A stretch of DNA of 64,000 nt, from positions 62,001 to 126,000 of IMG/VR virus record IMGVR_UViG_3300010885_025649; one strand, 5' to 3'. A model generated the notes under the pieces. The model was not told the DNA's origin. It saw nothing but the letters and a program-made list of their open reading frames with translations, and did no database searches. Each line of letters opens with the position of its first letter. Position 1 is the stretch's first letter. Below, one piece after another: positions 23,405 through 55,699 of this stretch. The position numbers were made by a program, and so were the translations under genes.

Positions 23405-23668
23405 TTAATTTTCATATCCTTCAAGATCCAAGTTTATTCTTCTAATAGCTTCTAGTTCAGTTCTTATATTAGCCTGAATAGCTTTTATAAAAGCATATCG
23501 TGCTTGTCGTTTAGAGGTGAAAGCTAGTTTAGGATCTATTGGGGTAACTCCTAACCGACCATCTGCATATCTAATATACCAATACTCTCCAATTCGTGTA
23601 GCGGGAACTATAGTTAAGCTACTAAAGTCCACTGCCCAACCTTTCTCCATAGCTATTTCAGGCATCAT
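23405..23668 (-). CDS. Hypothetical protein
   Basis: ORF with GGAGA RBS. Confidence 0.5.
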   Translation of the reverse strand: MMPEIAMEKGWAVDFSSLTIVPATRIGEYWYIRYADGRLGVTPIDPKLAFTSKRQARYAFIKAIQANIRTELEAIRRINLDLEGYEN

Positions 23669-23696
23669 CTGTAGTATCTCCTTAAGAATTGATTAA

Positions 23697-23732
23697 TGGG
23701 CTGTGTAGGAATCAAACCTACCTGAAGGCGTA
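23697..23732 (-). pseudogene. 3' half of an interrupted (outer) tRNA
   Basis: TACGC-CTTCAG-GTAGG-TTTGATT-CCTAC-ACAGCCC-A; pairs with the 5' half at 24483-24512. Confidence 0.8.
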
Positions 23733-23821
23733 TGGGAGTGTAGGGAATCGAACCCTAACACGGGGCCAGTCCAGCCCACTTGAGGATATAAATCTCACGA
23801 TGCTCCATACATCACACTCCC
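23733..23821 (-). tRNA. Class II (Leu-like body) tRNA with UAU anticodon, nested in the outer tRNA
   Basis: GGGAGTG/CACTCCC-A73, loop TTTATAT, about 22-nt V-arm, T-arm TAGGG-TTCGATT-CCCTA; one A-C mismatch at the stem base. Confidence 0.7.
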
Positions 23822-23828
23822 CTATTAT

Positions 23829-24419
23829 TTAAATATCTTTCTCTTTAACTTGTTCAGCAGCTAATTTAGCCCAGTAACCTCTTCCGGGTTTAACTATACC
23901 ATAACTATCACACCACTTACCAATACAACGATCAGATACCAAATAACGTTTAGCAACTTGTATTGTAGGTATTGTCCACACTAACACTTCTAATTCTTCC
24001 TTAGTGGGTCTTTCCGCTTGTCGTCTACTTAAGCCTGCACAAGAAAGACTACAATGTACTGTGTTTTTATTATCACTAAAGAAAGCATTACCACAAGACT
24101 TACATTCTTTAGTATCCTTGGATTGTTTTGCAGTTGTAACAGTTTCACCAATTGGCGCACCCCTATCAATCCAAGCATGTAATTTCATGTGCTGGCCTCT
24201 ATCAATAACTAATAAGTTATCCACAGCATTATTTCCTCGGTTACAATCTAAATGATGAACAACTTCATTAGGCAGTAATCATCTACCTATAAGCGTTTCA
24301 GCAATCATTATATGTTCATATATCCAACCATCCCAATTATCACTACTCATACTTGATATATTACCAGGGGCATAAACTAATTTATAACCATTTAGTTCTC
24401 TAGTTCTTTCTAATGACAT
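23829..24419 (-). pseudogene. HNH homing endonuclease with one in-frame TGA
   Basis: ATG at 24419; …YEHIMIAETLIGR*LLPNEVVHHLDCNRGNNAVDNL…H; TGA at 24279-24281; C-terminal Zn-ribbon and HTH. Confidence 0.85.
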
Positions 24420-24446
24420 TAATTTACCTAACTTTATAATATACTT

Positions 24447-24475
24447 ATTATATCACAGTCGAACATACTAATCAA
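24447..24475 (-). promoter_or_regulatory. Sigma70-type promoter of the HNH/tRNA cassette
   Basis: TTGATT-N17-TATAAT, at the start of the insert inside the outer tRNA. Confidence 0.7.
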
Positions 24476-24482
24476 CCCAACT

Positions 24483-24512
24483 TACGCTGCCTCCTCAATC
24501 GGCCAACAGCCC
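24483..24512 (-). pseudogene. 5' half of the interrupted (outer) tRNA
   Basis: GGGCTGT-TG-GCC-GATTGAGGA-GGC-A-GCGTA; 7/7 acceptor and 5/5 anticodon-stem complementarity to 23697-23732. Confidence 0.8.
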
Positions 24513-24563
24513 GTAAAATGCCCCTCAATAAACATGAACAGCAACTCTAAACCTTCACGCATA

Positions 24564-24698
24564 TTAATTCCTCTGCTCGGTTGTAGTGGGACATTGATAA
24601 TAAGTAATCTTGACATTTTGCATAGCACCAATAGCAATTGTCATCGCAAAGATGAATATCATTATCATCTTGAGACGTTCTGTTGTAAGCCATTCCAT
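24564..24698 (-). CDS. Small membrane peptide (44 aa)
   Basis: AGGAG RBS; MEWLTTERLKMIMIFIFAMTIAIGAM…; one TM helix. Confidence 0.45.
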   Translation of the reverse strand: MEWLTTERLKMIMIFIFAMTIAIGAMQNVKITYYQCPTTTEQRN

Positions 24699-24721
24699 GA
24701 GTAGCTCCTGTGAGGTTAATT

Positions 24722-24785: not shown

Positions 24786-25454
24786 ATGAGGTTATATACA
24801 GACGAAGAATATAAAGCAGCTAAAAATGAAGATACTTTAAAAATGCAATGTGATTATTGCAATCAGGAGTACATAAAGAGTAAAAGATCTATTTATAAGG
24901 GATTACTTAAAGGATCTACAAAACAATACTGTAGTAAAGAATGCCAAAGCGTAGGACAAGTTACTAGAGTTGCTGTTACCTGTACTAATTGTAATACAGA
25001 ATTTACTAAATCTAAATCTACTATTACCAAGAATAACTTTTGTAGTAGTAGCTGTGCAGCTACATTTAATAATAAAGTTACACCTAAAAGATCTCCAGAA
25101 GGAAGTTGCTTTACTTGTAAAGTTGCTATTGCAAAGAGTTTGAAATACTGTAAAGATTGCTATAAAGAAATACATCATGCCGATTGTACTTTAAAAAGTA
25201 TTAAATATGATAAACATCATAAATCCACAGCTTATGCTCTTGTGAGAACTAGAGCTAGAGCAATTGCTAAAAAGTTAGGTTGGTATAAATGCTACAACTG
25301 TGGTTATGATAAACATATAGAAATCGCTCATATTAAAGGAATAACCGATTTTCCAGAAGATACTTTAATATCAGTAGTAAATGATATAAATAACTTATTA
25401 CCTCTTTGCCCTAACTGTCACTGGGAATTTGATAATAATAACTTGATATTATAA
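24786..25454 (+). CDS. Free-standing HNH homing endonuclease with Cys-rich N-terminal repeats
   Basis: CxxC repeats, NNFCSSSCAATFNN; C-terminal CYNCG…EIAHIKGI…NNLLPLCPNCHWEFD; opposite strand to neighbours. Confidence 0.88.
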   Translation: MRLYTDEEYKAAKNEDTLKMQCDYCNQEYIKSKRSIYKGLLKGSTKQYCSKECQSVGQVTRVAVTCTNCNTEFTKSKSTITKNNFCSSSCAATFNNKVTPKRSPEGSCFTCKVAIAKSLKYCKDCYKEIHHADCTLKSIKYDKHHKSTAYALVRTRARAIAKKLGWYKCYNCGYDKHIEIAHIKGITDFPEDTLISVVNDINNLLPLCPNCHWEFDNNNLIL

Positions 25455-34195: not shown

Positions 34196-34217
34196 ACAAA
34201 AGCCCCCGTAAGGGGGC
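34196..34217 (-). terminator. Intrinsic terminator ending the tmRNA transcript
   Basis: GCCCCC-TTAC-GGGGGC-TTTT. Confidence 0.8.
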
Positions 34218-34266
34218 CGATGTCTAACTAGTTGGGTAACAAGGCTAGTTAGCAACCCCGCTCAGT

Positions 34267-34317
34267 TTACGCAGCTACAAGAGCGCGCTTACGAGAGAAA
34301 GGATAAATGTTATTGAC
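34267..34317 (-). other. tmRNA tag reading frame (A)VNNIYPFSRKRALVAA*
   Basis: Direct translation; resembles cyanobacterial ANNIV.F.R..AA tags. Confidence 0.9.
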
Positions 34318-34417
34318 CTTTATTTTGTTTGTGTTTCTTCGCTTACACTGCGTTCAGTGGTACTCTTTCCCAATCATGTCGAAACCTGTATATCCCCGAG
34401 TAGTGGAGATAAGGGGA

Positions 34418-34698
34418 CACGTTACCCCCAGTTTTCACTGAGGCGTGGACTATTCCTTCAACCAAATGCGTGTCTTTGGTTGCCAAGCATTTAAAGCATT
34501 ACTGCTTTCCTAGTCACACTTAAAGTTAGACAAAGCTAATCACGCTCGAAGTGCTCTATGAGTCTCTAGACCATCGTTACCATCACTGGTAGTTTTGGTA
34601 CGGTGTTAACATGTCTGGTTACCCAGATTTAGTCTTCGCCGTTTGAGCTTGGTTTACATTCAACCATTACTGATTGAAGCGACTAACTCTTTCGAGTA
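34418..34698 (-). ncRNA. Group I intron (281 nt, ORF-less) in the tmRNA T-loop
   Basis: Exon …TTCGAU| with P1 U-G pair; P3 GCTC/GAGC; R GAGACT; S GAAGGAATAGTCC; P9 GAAA hairpin; terminal G then TCCCCT. Confidence 0.9.
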
Positions 34699-34871
34699 AT
34701 CGAACCCCTGTCCAGTCATAGTACTCAGTACCACCTAGTCCTCTTCTTAATAAGATCTGTTGAGAACAGTTAGACCCACCGTTATAAGGCCACGGACACG
34801 GGCGCCGAAGATTAAACTATCAGGGCCAGGACGAACCTTGGCCCAACAGCTACAAAGCCTTTGCTTTGTAT

Positions 34872-34990: not shown

Positions 34991-35259
34991 CTCCTCGAAA
35001 AGGATTCGAACCTTTGACCAGTCGATTACTTTACCACTACGGTTTTCACCGCCCTTTCAGTTTGTGGTCTGGACTTTCTCTTCATCCTATTTCTAAGAGC
35101 ACTCTATAAAGTCTCTACACTTGCCCGATCTTACGACCTGCTAGCTCGGGATTGGCATTTTAAAGCTTTCCCCGATTTAGGAGTGTTTTCATCTATTCAT
35201 TTCTAAATAGCGCTGCTATCATTTTACAGTCGACCGCTCTACCACTGAGCTACCGAGGA
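34991..35259 (-). tRNA. tRNA-Asn(GTT), intron-containing
   Basis: Exon 1 35226-35259 ends GTCGA-CTGT; exon 2 34991-35028 begins TAA-TCGAC; spliced loop CTGTTAA; TCCTCGG/TCGAGGA-G73. Confidence 0.92.
35029..35225 (-). ncRNA. Group I intron (197 nt) between anticodon positions 35 and 36
   Basis: P1 CUGU/GCAG with U-G; P3 CACTC/GAGTG; P4 TCGGG/CCCGA; P7 GACTTT/AAAGTC; GAAA P9; terminal G. Confidence 0.92.
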
Positions 35260-52863: not shown

Positions 52864-52949
52864 CGGGGAGCTGGTAGAATCGAACTCCAAGCGCTTCCGC
52901 GCTCCATCCGCTTTCAAGGCGGTGCAGATCCCAGATCTGATAACTCCCC
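52864..52949 (-). tRNA. tRNA-Ser(TGA) with long D-stem and bulged T-stem
   Basis: GGGGAGT/GCTCCCC-G73; D-stem CAGATC/GATCTG; ACCGC-CTTGAAA-GCGG; V-arm. Confidence 0.8.
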
Positions 52950-52958
52950 AATCACCAA

Positions 52959-53047
52959 AGGAAAGCCTGGGATTCGAACCCAGGGGAGCCTCTCGGCCCC
53001 GACACTTTAGTAGAATGTTGCAATCGGCCATGCTCTGCCAGCTTTCC
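52959..53047 (-). tRNA. tRNA-Ser-type body with ACT anticodon
   Basis: GGAAAGC/GCTTTCC; ACATT-CTACTAA-AGTGT; long V-arm. Confidence 0.8.
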
Positions 53048-53330
53048 CTATACTTTTATTATAACATATCTTTACAGCGCTGTTGAATCTCAGAATCTAA
53101 AAGAATTTAATTCTTCCTGACTAACACCTATCAACTCTTGTTCAATTAATAAACTTAATTTATTCATAAGACCTCCTAAGGTTTGATCTCTTGTAAGTAT
53201 TGAACAGCACGCATAATAGTACAACCTAATATAGCTTTTAATTGTATAGCCGCTTCTAAAACATTCATTGATCACCTATAGTTTGTGTAATTGGAGAGCG
53301 GTGTACTTTGGTAGGTGAGCCGCTTTCCTT

Positions 53331-54972: not shown

Positions 54973-55000
54973 CTTAAGCTCCAGATTGTGTGTTTGAAAG

Positions 55001-55074
55001 GGCGGTTGAAAGGAGTCGAACCTATACACCCCCTGTGCTATATACAGGTGCTCTACCACTGAGCTACAACCGCC
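55001..55074 (-). tRNA. His-type tRNA body with non-His anticodon loop (ATATAGC)
   Basis: G-1 GCGGTTG/CAACCGC C73; CCTGT/ACAGG stem intact. Confidence 0.7.
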
Positions 55075-55091: not shown

Positions 55092-55164
55092 GGTGACATG
55101 AAAGGAATCGAACCAATATCTCCCGCGGATCATGCGGACGCACTACCTTTGTGCTACAGTCACC
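55092..55164 (-). tRNA. His-type tRNA-like gene with loop ATGATCC
   Basis: GGTGAC…GTCAC-C; D-stem GCAC/GTGC; TCCGC/GCGGG; imperfect T-stem. Confidence 0.55.
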
Positions 55165-55453: not shown

Positions 55454-55510
55454 CAGCCCCAACCGGATTTGAACCGGTGATCTCTCGCGTGACAGGCGAT
55501 CGCTTTAACC
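55454..55510 (-). pseudogene. tRNA-Asp(GTC) lacking 5' acceptor strand
   Basis: TCGC-CTGTCAC-GCGA, ACCGG-TTCAAAT-CCGGT, TGGGGCT-G73; the D-loop GGTTAA is the stop of ORF 55505-55699. Confidence 0.75.
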
Positions 55511-55699
55511 TACGCATTGTCTAATAACAATATCATCCGAATCTAATTCAACTACAATGCGATCTTGTAAGAAATCACAAGTAAGTGGAGTATATTCTTG
55601 TACAGTTATTCCCAATTCTTTACACAATTCTTTGGCATTAATCCAAGGTAACCCAATTAGATTAGGTAGCTTGATTGTATTATCATATTCATCAAACAT
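55505..55699 (-). CDS. Small protein, potato-inhibitor I/I78-like fold possible
   Basis: PNLIGL…AKE…T.DF..DRIVVELD..DIV pattern. Confidence 0.45.
   Translation of the reverse strand: MFDEYDNTIKLPNLIGLPWINAKELCKELGITVQEYTPLTCDFLQDRIVVELDSDDIVIRQCVG

What the first reader, a model, noticed from the sequence alone, without database searches (positions are those of the whole stretch)
23697..24512. Nested tRNA: anticodon loop replaced by a promoter + HNH + second tRNA cassette
Seen: two halves 750 nt apart pair perfectly (acceptor GGGCTGT/ACAGCCC 7/7; anticodon stem GCGTA/TACGC 5/5). The whole 7-nt loop is replaced by a TTGATT-N17-TATAAT promoter, an HNH gene and a complete different tRNA. The inner A73 abuts the outer 3' half with no spacer. 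No group I core motifs were found in the insert. Inference (a): a homing cassette that destroys a resident tRNA at its anticodon and brings a replacement tRNA. Inference (b): 3' processing of the inner tRNA releases the outer 3' half, giving a loop-less two-piece tRNA mimic. I do not know of a described element with this design.
Basis: partly seen in the sequence, partly recalled or inferred. Interest (0 to 1): 0.8.

Follow-up and report, generated by a model that had tools for sequence, protein, structure and literature searches.

The report
tRNA gene split by HNH endonuclease
In an uncultured freshwater cyanophage, a selfish HNH endonuclease gene that normally travels inside a self-splicing intron sits, without the intron's ribozyme, in the anticodon loop of a tRNA gene; the split encloses a neighbouring intact tRNA, and this is most likely a scar of mobile-element activity rather than a designed two-piece tRNA.

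Summary
On the minus strand, a 30-nt tRNA 5' half (24512-24483) and a 36-nt 3' half (23732-23697) pair 7/7 and 5/5. They are separated by exactly 750 nt: a promoter-like leader, an HNH ORF with one in-frame TGA, and a complete 89-nt tRNA(UAU). Two metagenome assemblies and a Logan contig agree, so this is not a chimera.

The design derives from a known kind. Seven homologues of this HNH (about 40% identity) lie inside group I introns at the same place, the anticodon loop of phage tRNA(CAU) genes. The window has a similar leader but no ribozyme and no loop nucleotides, so the outer tRNA cannot be restored by splicing.

The inner tRNA is probably not imported cargo. It is a conserved cyanophage tRNA with compensatory changes. 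In 8 of 16 related contigs it is followed by a tRNA(CAU) (1-3 nt away in seven, about 22 nt in one) that resembles the outer halves.

My best reading (0.62) is a ribozyme-less homing-endonuclease insertion plus a local rearrangement, giving a dead outer tRNA, a live inner tRNA and a freshly inactivated HNH. A cargo-cassette reading is not excluded: contig L156 holds a second nested case in which both tRNAs have anticodon UGU. No insert-free allele and no RNA data were found.

The parts
24483..24512 (-). Outer tRNA 5' half: acceptor 5' strand, D arm and anticodon-stem 5' strand (positions 1-31). Probably a tRNA(CAU)-type gene.
   Evidence: Sequence. ARAGORN calls the joined halves a tRNA, against 1 of 20,000 control joins. 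Found again by my own split-tRNA scan of the whole window.
24420..24482 (-). 63-nt leader with a sigma-70-like TTGATT-N17-TATAAT (-35 at 24475-24470, -10 at 24452-24447, TG-extended).
   Evidence: It has the same length as the intron leader of L162 (63 nt), and similarly placed hexamers can be read in the printed leaders of L162 and L157 (TTGACT-N17-TATACT) and L008 (TTGTAT-N17-TATAAA) (by eye).
23829..24419 (-). HNH endonuclease ORF of 196 codons with a single in-frame TGA at 24281-24279, eight codons before the intact HH..N..H motif. It has the C-terminal PTKEEL...KPGRGYW tail.
   Evidence: Pfam HNH_3 and phrog_15471/10730. Homologues at 37-46% identity are 170-213 aa and uninterrupted. Read by eye against the translations, the TGA stands where relatives have P, S, Q, A or R. 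The shared tail is shown.
23822..23828 (-). 7-nt spacer between the HNH stop codon and the inner tRNA.
   Evidence: In relatives of the ribozyme-less subfamily the HNH stop lies roughly 0-35 nt before the next tRNA or overlaps it.
23733..23821 (-). Inner tRNA(UAU) with a long variable arm. It is complete and conserved, and CCA is not encoded.
   Evidence: ARAGORN. Rfam tRNA 38 bits. It is 85-88% identical to a family in 16 IMG/VR cyanophage contigs and S-CRM01. Seven of 25 pairs carry compensatory changes.
23697..23732 (-). Outer tRNA 3' half: anticodon-stem 3' strand, 6-nt variable loop, T arm (loop TTTGATT, U56), acceptor 3' strand and A73.
   Evidence: Its central part resembles the tRNA(CAU) that follows the inner tRNA's homologue in relatives.
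23405..23668 (-). Context: an orphan 87-aa ORF that starts 28 nt after the outer 3' half.
   Evidence: Only itself was found among 5.8 billion proteins.
24786..25454 (+). Context: a second, unrelated HNH gene (HNH_2, 222 aa) on the opposite strand, 273 nt upstream of the outer 5' half.
   Evidence: Its HNH-motif region is 45% identical over 51 aa to S-CRM01 g201, the HNH that abuts the inner tRNA's homologue there.

Best explanation
This is a tRNA gene fractured by a homing-endonuclease gene that has no ribozyme.

The HNH belongs to a family whose intron-borne members home into the anticodon loop of phage tRNA(CAU) genes. Here the same kind of leader and HNH occupy that position in a tRNA that was most likely the tRNA(CAU) normally lying directly downstream of tRNA(UAU) in this phage group. 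There is no group I core, and the seven loop nucleotides are gone, so the outer tRNA cannot be rejoined and is a dead remnant.

The inner tRNA(UAU) is the resident, functional neighbour. It ended up between the HNH and the outer 3' half through a rearrangement linked to break repair. A 'TA' microhomology at the A73|T39 junction fits a deletion or a template switch.

Expected expression (inferred): the internal promoter-like site, or read-through from upstream, would transcribe the HNH and tRNA(UAU). RNase P and RNase Z would release the tRNA, and CCA would be added afterwards.

The HNH itself has just been inactivated by one nonsense codon.

Shown: the anatomy, the homologies, the absence of a ribozyme, the conservation of the inner tRNA, and the agreement between assemblies.
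Inferred: the identity of the outer tRNA (CAU), the order of events, the processing steps, and the non-function of the outer halves.
For: 1. The HNH family homes into tRNA(CAU) anticodon loops. L007, L008, L157, L159, L161, L162 and L163 all carry a 5' exon ending ...CTCAT, then leader, HNH and core, with the core ending in G before the AA of the 3' exon. Rfam Intron_gpI scores 38-78 bits in six of them. L162 produced no Rfam intron hit and is placed by its exon junctions and its close similarity to L157.

2. The window lacks any intron match at E <= 10. No canonical loop can be rebuilt from the flanks.

3. The window's leader is 63 nt, as in L162. Similarly placed -35/-10-like hexamers can be read in the leaders of L162, L157 and L008.

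4. The inner tRNA family occurs in 16 contigs plus S-CRM01. Seven of 25 pairs show compensatory changes. In 8 of 16 contigs a tRNA(CAU) follows it. That tRNA shares GCAGCG-A / T-CGCCT-CAGGT-GGTT-GAT with the outer halves, including a compensatory A-T to T-A change in the anticodon stem.

5. There is only one copy of the inner tRNA's 19-mer per contig. No remnant of a second copy lies in the flanks.

6. The TGA is the only defect in an otherwise full-length ORF with an intact HNH motif.

7. The tRNA-Sec-like Rfam hit in the window has anticodon UGA (a tRNA-Ser), so it is not a TGA suppressor.

8. The phage carries true group I introns elsewhere, in tRNA-Asn and in its tmRNA, so such elements circulate in it.

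9. Three assemblies agree.
Against: - No insert-free or intron-bearing allele of this particular tRNA was found, so the ancestral state is inferred from relatives that are only 85-88% identical in the inner tRNA.
- The outer acceptor stem and D arm do not resemble the relatives' tRNA(CAU). Over the whole length the outer halves are about as similar to other tRNAs.
- Moving the inner tRNA inside the split needs more than one breakpoint. Insertion of an HNH+tRNA fragment as a unit would need only one event.
- The window's HNH carries the C-terminal tail of the ribozyme-less subfamily, so it may never have been inside an intron.
- Perfect 12/12 pairing of the halves is what recency predicts, but it is also what selection would predict.
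Confidence: 0.62

Rival explanations
1. Cargo cassette. Promoter, HNH and tRNA(UAU) form a mobile unit. The HNH cuts the anticodon loop of a tRNA(CAU) gene, and the unit is captured in the break in one step with loss of the loop. The cargo tRNA reads the same codon (AUA, if the target was the lysidine tRNA-Ile2) and so offsets the damage, doing the job that a ribozyme does for an intron. Its long variable arm could make its own gene immune to cutting.
For: - It needs only one event.
- In the ribozyme-less subfamily the HNH stop is usually followed within about 0-35 nt by a tRNA, so an HNH-tRNA unit is plausible.
- L156 holds an independent nested case: the tRNA-Thr(UGU) 5' part, a long-arm tRNA(UGU), the HNH, then a T arm and acceptor 3' strand that pairs 7/7 with the 5' part. 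The broken and the enclosed tRNA have the same anticodon.
- In S-CRM01 and L150 a different HNH abuts the 5' end of the tRNA(UAU) homologue.
Against: - tRNA(UAU) stands next to an intact tRNA(CAU) with no adjacent HNH in 8 of 16 related contigs, which is the pattern of a resident gene.
- The order of tRNA and HNH is reversed between L156 and the window, so there is no conserved cassette.
- No second site carrying the same unit was found.
- Whether the outer tRNA read AUA is unknown.
- In the HNH tree the window does not group significantly with L156 and L158.
Confidence: 0.2
2. Functional two-piece RNA. After RNase P and RNase Z release the inner tRNA, the outer 5' half (with the HNH mRNA as a tail) and the outer 3' half stay paired. 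They form a tRNA-like acceptor/T-arm module that is processed, CCA-tailed or charged, or that stabilises the HNH mRNA or the downstream mRNA.
For: - The two stems pair perfectly, 12/12, and the D-arm and T-arm elements are intact.
- The minimum-energy and centroid folds of the 816-nt RNA keep the outer acceptor stem and T arm together with the inner cloverleaf.
- The inner tRNA lacks an encoded CCA, so cleavage after A73 would free the 3' half at exactly T39.
Against: - There is no anticodon loop, so the RNA cannot decode.
- The fold is no more stable than shuffled sequence (z = -0.56).
- The T loop has U56, which I recall to be a nearly invariant C. Other tRNAs of this phage are also odd.
- Only one lineage carries the arrangement, so there is no sign of selection.
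- In the comparable case L156 the outer anticodon-stem 3' strand has already been lost, as expected for decay.
- No RNA data were available.
Confidence: 0.06
3. An unconventional intron that is still removed, for instance by a ribozyme acting in trans from one of the phage's other group I introns, or by protein enzymes plus a ligase, so that the outer tRNA is restored.
For: The phage has two other group I-like introns in RNA genes. The insert sits at the family's canonical intron site.
Against: - The seven loop nucleotides are missing from the DNA, so no excision could recreate an anticodon loop.
- There is no U at the end of the 5' exon and no G at the end of the insert.
- There is no ribozyme match.
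Confidence: 0.03
4. Assembly chimera or a strain-mixing artefact.
For: The source is a metagenome. tRNA clusters are repetitive.
Against: The sequence is identical in two IMG/VR contigs from different metagenomes. A separately assembled 12.7-kb Logan contig crosses both junctions with no differences. 100%-identical pieces occur in a second sample and study. Both halves fit each other perfectly, which a chimera would not produce.
Confidence: 0.02

Closest known systems
Group I introns in bacterial and phage tRNA anticodon loops that encode a homing endonuclease. The described example is the cyanobacterial tRNA-fMet intron, whose endonuclease is specific for the anticodon region (Bonocora & Shub 2001, cited in PMC3984707). 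The phage tRNA(CAU)/HNH_3 introns seen here are L007, L008, L157, L159, L161, L162 and L163.
   Same: The insertion point is the same (the anticodon loop of a CAU-type tRNA). The HNH is homologous at about 40% identity. The 5' leader is of similar length with similarly placed promoter-like hexamers.
   Different: The window has no ribozyme core, no splice-site nucleotides and no anticodon-loop nucleotides. A whole tRNA gene stands where the last 83-97 nt of the intron would be. The outer tRNA cannot be rejoined.
Free-standing homing endonuclease genes in phage tRNA clusters, for example T4 SegB (Brok-Volchanskaya et al. 2008, from my own knowledge). Here, also the ribozyme-less subfamily found in cyanobacterial tRNA arrays (L165-L189).
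   Same: A nuclease gene with a possible promoter of its own, wedged among tRNA genes, with a tRNA directly downstream. The C-terminal PTKEEL...KPGRGYW tail is shared.
   Different: Free-standing genes normally lie between intact genes. This one lies inside a tRNA gene and splits it.
Defunct homing endonuclease genes, such as I-TevIII of T4 (PMC2790892).
   Same: A recently inactivated endonuclease ORF left in place.
   Different: In T4 the host intron still splices, so the host gene stays functional. Here it does not.
'Fractured genes': gene halves separated by a free-standing homing endonuclease gene and rejoined by split inteins (Dassa et al. 2009, PMC2677866).
   Same: A gene is split into two collinear pieces by an endonuclease gene, in environmental phage-like DNA.
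   Different: Those halves are rejoined at the protein level. No rejoining mechanism is evident for these RNA halves.
Split and permuted tRNA genes of Nanoarchaeum and Cyanidioschyzon (reviewed in PMC4090602).
   Same: tRNA halves that can pair through the acceptor and anticodon stems.
   Different: By my own recollection, those retain the anticodon loop and a bulge-helix-bulge motif that is cut and ligated by dedicated enzymes. Neither feature is present here.

Membership tests
Group I intron with homing endonuclease in a tRNA anticodon loop | Catalytic core (P3-P9) detectable by the Rfam RF00028 model | tested here: not met
   No Intron_gpI match in 23500-24700 at E <= 10. The same model scores 38-78 bits in six homologous elements.
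Group I intron with homing endonuclease in a tRNA anticodon loop | The 5' exon ends in U, the intron ends in G, and the exons together keep a complete 7-nt anticodon loop | tested here: not met
   The 5' stem is followed by AGTTGGG. The insert ends ...CTCCCA directly before the 3' stem. Relatives read CTCAT|...G|AA.
Group I intron with homing endonuclease in a tRNA anticodon loop | Inserted in the anticodon loop of a tRNA gene | tested here: met
   The insert lies between positions 31 and 39.
Group I intron with homing endonuclease in a tRNA anticodon loop | The ORF is homologous to intron-borne endonucleases of the family | tested here: met
   39-41% identity to the L007 and L008 ORFs over both pieces. 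However, the C-terminal tail is that of the ribozyme-less subfamily.
Free-standing homing endonuclease gene | A nuclease ORF of a homing family with its own expression signals, not inside a splicing element | tested here: met
   HNH_3 and phrog_15471. A promoter-like site lies in the leader. No ribozyme was found.
Free-standing homing endonuclease gene | An uninterrupted ORF | tested here: not met
   In-frame TGA at 24281-24279. The tRNA-Sec-like Rfam hit has anticodon UGA (tRNA-Ser), so it is not a TGA suppressor.
Free-standing homing endonuclease gene | Relatives lack the gene and carry an intact target site | tested here: inconclusive
   No intact allele of this tRNA was found. In 8 of 16 related contigs an intact tRNA(CAU) follows the inner tRNA's homologue, with no adjacent HNH.
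Free-standing homing endonuclease gene | Site-specific cleavage of the empty site | not testable with these tools
   This needs an enzyme assay.
Functional tRNA gene (inner, UAU) | A cloverleaf above the Rfam cut-off, with conservation and compensatory changes | tested here: met
   38 bits against a cut-off of 29. ARAGORN call. Seven of 25 pairs carry changes on both sides across 13 sequences.
Functional tRNA gene (outer) | A contiguous cloverleaf with an anticodon loop | tested here: not met
   The loop is absent and the halves are 750 nt apart. The arms themselves are tRNA-like.
Split or permuted tRNA genes joined by splicing endonuclease and ligase | A bulge-helix-bulge motif at the junction and loop nucleotides kept | tested here: not met
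   Read directly from the sequence: there is no complementarity beyond the two tRNA stems and no loop nucleotides.

The most novel reading that the evidence does not exclude
A ribozyme-free way for a homing endonuclease to live inside a tRNA gene. The element destroys its target tRNA but carries, or recruits into the split, a second tRNA for the same codon. Here that would be UAU for AUA. In L156 both tRNAs have anticodon UGU. The second tRNA's long variable arm would make its own gene immune to cutting. The enclosed tRNA would then do what self-splicing does for an intron. The window would also be a natural intermediate between free-standing and intron-borne endonucleases.
Probability: 0.15. 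Interest if true: 0.8.

Novelty: new variant of a known kind. Interest (0 to 1): 0.48.

Why it matters
Mobile group I introns are thought to arise when an endonuclease gene and a ribozyme come together at one site, and to decay when either part is lost. Here one endonuclease family appears in three states:
- inside group I introns of tRNA(CAU) genes;
- free-standing between genes of cyanobacterial and phage tRNA arrays;
- in this window, at the intron's canonical site with an intron-like leader but without a ribozyme.

This gives a concrete natural case for studying how such elements gain or lose their ribozyme, and what happens to a dispensable host gene when they do. It also warns annotators that tRNA finders miss fractured tRNA genes, and that nested tRNA calls in phage tRNA clusters can mark endonuclease activity.

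If the enclosed tRNA proves to be a compensating partner, that would be a new strategy for a selfish element. On present evidence the outer tRNA is most likely just a scar.

Tried and rejected
- **Insert-free or variant alleles.** I ran exact scans for both halves, and for an intact allele with any 7-nt loop, in IMG/VR. I scanned JGI metagenome contigs for the 5' half. These returned only the window's own phage plus one chance match (L105). BLAST of the halves against GenBank phages gave only generic T-arm hits.
- **Reads.** Two DNA runs hold the sequence. Their contigs show no joints or variants, though contigs hide rare variants. No RNA run was listed.
- **Synteny through neighbours.** The 87-aa neighbour is an orphan. 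The 139-aa neighbour has 422 relatives, but none of the 78 loci examined had an outer-like tRNA.
- **TGA recoding.** The Rfam 'tRNA-Sec' hit at 52865-52949 has anticodon UGA (tRNA-Ser), so it is not a suppressor.
- **Hidden ribozyme.** Rejected.
- **Remnant of a second inner tRNA or of the relatives' tRNA(CAU) in the flanks.** None scored above shuffled controls.
- **Short remnants of the upstream region or leader in relatives.** None were found.
- **HNH tree.** The window's position is unresolved, and my L007 row was mis-framed, so the tree is used only for the L156/L158/L164 clade.
- **More fractured tRNAs among 80 bacterial loci.** Shared acceptor stems in cyanobacterial tRNA arrays gave many false pairs and no convincing new case.
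- **Which amino acid the outer tRNA accepted, and whether the relatives' tRNA(CAU) is Met or Ile2.** This could not be decided.
- **Literature.** No paper on nested or HNH-split phage tRNA genes was found.
Full report
**What is there.** All features lie on the minus strand.

- A tRNA 5' half occupies 24512-24483. It has the acceptor strand GGGCTGT, U8, a 3-bp D stem whose loop carries A14, G18, G19 and A21, and the anticodon-stem strand GCGTA.
- A tRNA 3' half occupies 23732-23697. It reads TACGC, then a 6-nt variable loop, the T arm GTAGG-TTTGATT-CCTAC, ACAGCCC and A73.
- Between them lie exactly 750 nt: a 63-nt leader, an HNH ORF of 196 codons (24419-23829) with one in-frame TGA (24281-24279), 7 nt, and an 89-nt tRNA(UAU) with a long variable arm (23821-23733).
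- The A73 of that inner tRNA touches T39 of the outer 3' half.

ARAGORN calls the joined halves a tRNA with any of four canonical loops. Only 1 of 20,000 control joins of the same geometry gave a call. My own scan of the window for split tRNAs finds the pair again. No choice of flanking nucleotides gives a loop with U33, so the anticodon loop is truly absent.

**Not an artefact.** The region is identical in two IMG/VR contigs from different metagenomes, one of 212 kb and one of 155 kb. A 12.7-kb Logan contig crosses both junctions without a difference. A second sample from another study holds identical pieces.

**What phage.** The nearest named relative is the freshwater Synechococcus myovirus S-CRM01, matched only through the inner tRNA. 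The window holds at least 13 tRNA genes.

**The HNH.** Its two pieces match Pfam HNH_3 and PHROG HNH families. Its homologues are 37-46% identical, 170-213 aa long and uninterrupted. Read by eye against the relatives' translations, the TGA stands where they have P, S, Q, A or R, so a single CGA-to-TGA change would explain it. The HH..N..H motif just downstream is intact. The window's tRNA-Sec-like Rfam hit has anticodon UGA, so it is a tRNA-Ser and not a TGA suppressor. The gene therefore looks like a very recent pseudogene, although low-level read-through cannot be excluded.

**The key comparison.** I examined fourteen relatives' loci and seven show one design: L007, L008, L157, L159, L161, L162 and L163.

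- Each has a tRNA(CAU) gene whose anticodon loop is cut after CTCAT.
- A 29-75-nt leader follows, then the HNH ORF, then a group I core that ends in G directly before AA and the rest of the tRNA.
- Rfam Intron_gpI scores 38-78 bits in six of them. L162 gave no Rfam intron hit, but it has the same exon junctions and is very close to L157.
- In five of them the ORF reads into the ribozyme, and only 83-97 nt follow the stop codon.

The window's leader has the same length as L162's (63 nt). Similarly placed -35/-10-like hexamers can be read in the leaders of L162, L157 and L008. The 96 nt after the window's stop codon, however, are a 7-nt spacer plus a tRNA, not a ribozyme. Rfam finds no intron match there even at E <= 10.

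The window's protein also ends in ...KPGRGYW... This tail is shared with a ribozyme-less subfamily (L156, L158, L160, L164). Further full-length relatives of the window's HNH lie between the genes of cyanobacterial tRNA arrays, usually with the stop codon about 0-35 nt before the next tRNA or overlapping it.

The element thus combines an intron-like position and leader with a free-standing type of enzyme and no ribozyme.

**The inner tRNA.** A 19-mer from it finds 16 further IMG/VR contigs. The family is 85-88% identical to the window's copy. Seven of its 25 pairs carry changes on both sides, including changes in the anticodon stem and variable arm of the window's copy. It is therefore a conserved, presumably functional gene.

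- In 8 of the 16 contigs a tRNA(CAU) follows it. The gap is 1-3 nt in seven contigs and about 22 nt in L153.
- That tRNA shares with the outer halves the stretch around the anticodon stem, variable loop and T arm. The anticodon stem GCGAA/TTCGC corresponds to GCGTA/TACGC in the window, a compensatory change.
- Its acceptor stem and D arm differ. Over the full length the outer halves are no closer to it than to several other tRNAs.

Three lines together suggest that the outer tRNA was the CAU tRNA that normally follows tRNA(UAU): the homing site of the HNH family, the position next to tRNA(UAU), and this partial similarity. I hold this as probable, not shown.

In S-CRM01 and L150 a different HNH abuts the 5' end of the tRNA(UAU) homologue. 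In L150 the CAU and Leu tRNAs lie upstream of it. In S-CRM01 a CAA tRNA does. The region is evidently reshuffled repeatedly around endonuclease genes.

**How it most likely came about and works.** An endonuclease gene of this family entered, or cut and was captured in, the anticodon loop of the CAU tRNA. With no ribozyme and no loop nucleotides left, the outer tRNA is dead. Phage tRNAs are accessory, so this can be tolerated.

The inner tRNA is single-copy, and no remnant of another copy lies nearby. It must therefore have been relocated or captured during the event. The relatives have T, then A, C or T, after A73, and the outer strand starts with TA. That gives a 1-2-nt microhomology at the junction. 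I could not resolve the path: every route from the tandem arrangement needs at least two breakpoints.

Expression is inferred. It would come from the leader's promoter-like site or from upstream, with RNase P and RNase Z release of tRNA(UAU) and CCA addition afterwards.

**Rivals.**
- *One-step cargo-cassette model.* This is the main alternative, and L156 makes it more attractive. There a tRNA-Thr(UGU) 5' part, a long-arm tRNA(UGU), the HNH, and a T arm plus acceptor strand that pairs 7/7 with the 5' part form a second nested case in which both anticodons match. However, the order of tRNA and HNH is reversed in L156. The outer tRNA of L156 has already lost its anticodon-stem 3' strand, which looks like decay. 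And tRNA(UAU) occurs beside an intact CAU tRNA without an adjacent HNH in 8 of 16 related contigs.
- *Functional two-piece RNA.* This is untested. The fold keeps the long-range acceptor stem but is no better than shuffles.
- *Splicing.* Excluded by the missing loop.
- *Assembly chimera.* Excluded by three concordant assemblies.

**Comparison with what is known.** The element works like an intron-less homing-endonuclease insertion. It fails the defining tests for a group I intron (no core, no splice sites). It fits a free-standing endonuclease gene, except that it lies inside its host gene and is itself interrupted. I found no paper describing nested or HNH-split phage tRNA genes. I rate it a new variant of a known kind, of moderate interest. 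Its main value is as a natural intermediate between intron-borne and free-standing endonucleases.

Noticed in passing
window 34991-35259 (-): A tRNA-Asn(GUU) gene that ARAGORN and the default Rfam filters missed. Its anticodon loop is interrupted after ...CTGT by an ORF-less insert of about 197 nt that matches Rfam Intron_gpI (41.4 bits, E 7e-9, below the cut-off of 50). The 3' exon resumes at TAATCGAC.
   Followed up: partly
window 34202-34762 (-): A phage-encoded cyanobacterial-type permuted tmRNA (Rfam tmRNA_permuted 47.9 bits, cyano_tmRNA 48.8 bits). Its T loop carries a 282-nt insertion that matches Intron_gpI (35.9 bits, E 3e-7). This looks like a tmRNA gene with a group I intron.
   Followed up: partly
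window 23733-23821 (-); L140-L155; L054-L056; L156 1347-1433; L158 1398-1487: Phage tRNAs with a long variable arm (class II shape) carry anticodons that normally belong to short-arm tRNAs: UAU (Ile codon AUA) in many cyanophages, and UGU (Thr) in L156 and L158. Which amino acid they accept is unknown. They could be mis-assigning tRNAs. S-CRM01's copy is not annotated as a tRNA in GenBank.
   Followed up: partly
L165-L189 (cyanobacterial genomes, e.g. Tolypothrix, Calothrix, Microseira, Dulcicalothrix): Full-length relatives of this HNH lie inside large tRNA gene arrays of filamentous cyanobacteria. The C-terminal PTKEEL...KPGRGYW domain alone is widespread in Nostocales.
   Followed up: partly
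window 24786-25454 (+): A second HNH gene of a different family (HNH_2), on the opposite strand, 273 nt from the split tRNA. Its motif region resembles S-CRM01 g201.
   Followed up: partly
window 52865-52949, 52958-53048, 55000-55073, 55093-55162, 55462-55515 (-): Several odd tRNA calls. A tRNA-Ser(UGA) is scored by Rfam as tRNA-Sec. ARAGORN reports 'Ser(act)' and 'Tyr(ata)'. Two tRNA hits are Rfam-only, and one of them is partial (model positions 10-63). Many tRNAs of this phage have non-canonical T loops.
   Followed up: no
L164 about 1230-1400: Upstream of its HNH lies a tRNA-like 5' part whose loop is TTCTAGT (anticodon CUA, which would read UAG), followed by an unusual long insert and a T arm. 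This may be another disrupted or suppressor-type tRNA.
   Followed up: no
L158 2101-2128: An orphan T arm, acceptor 3' strand and CCA lie right after the HNH stop codon. No matching 5' strand occurs within the 3.6-kb locus. The T arm is identical to the one in L156.
   Followed up: partly
L150 3463-3668; L148 1853-2063; L151 6869-6967; L155 1757-1855: manA RNA and wcaG RNA motifs (Rfam) lie in these tRNA-cluster loci of related cyanophages. In L150 the manA motif starts directly after the tRNA(UAU).
   Followed up: no
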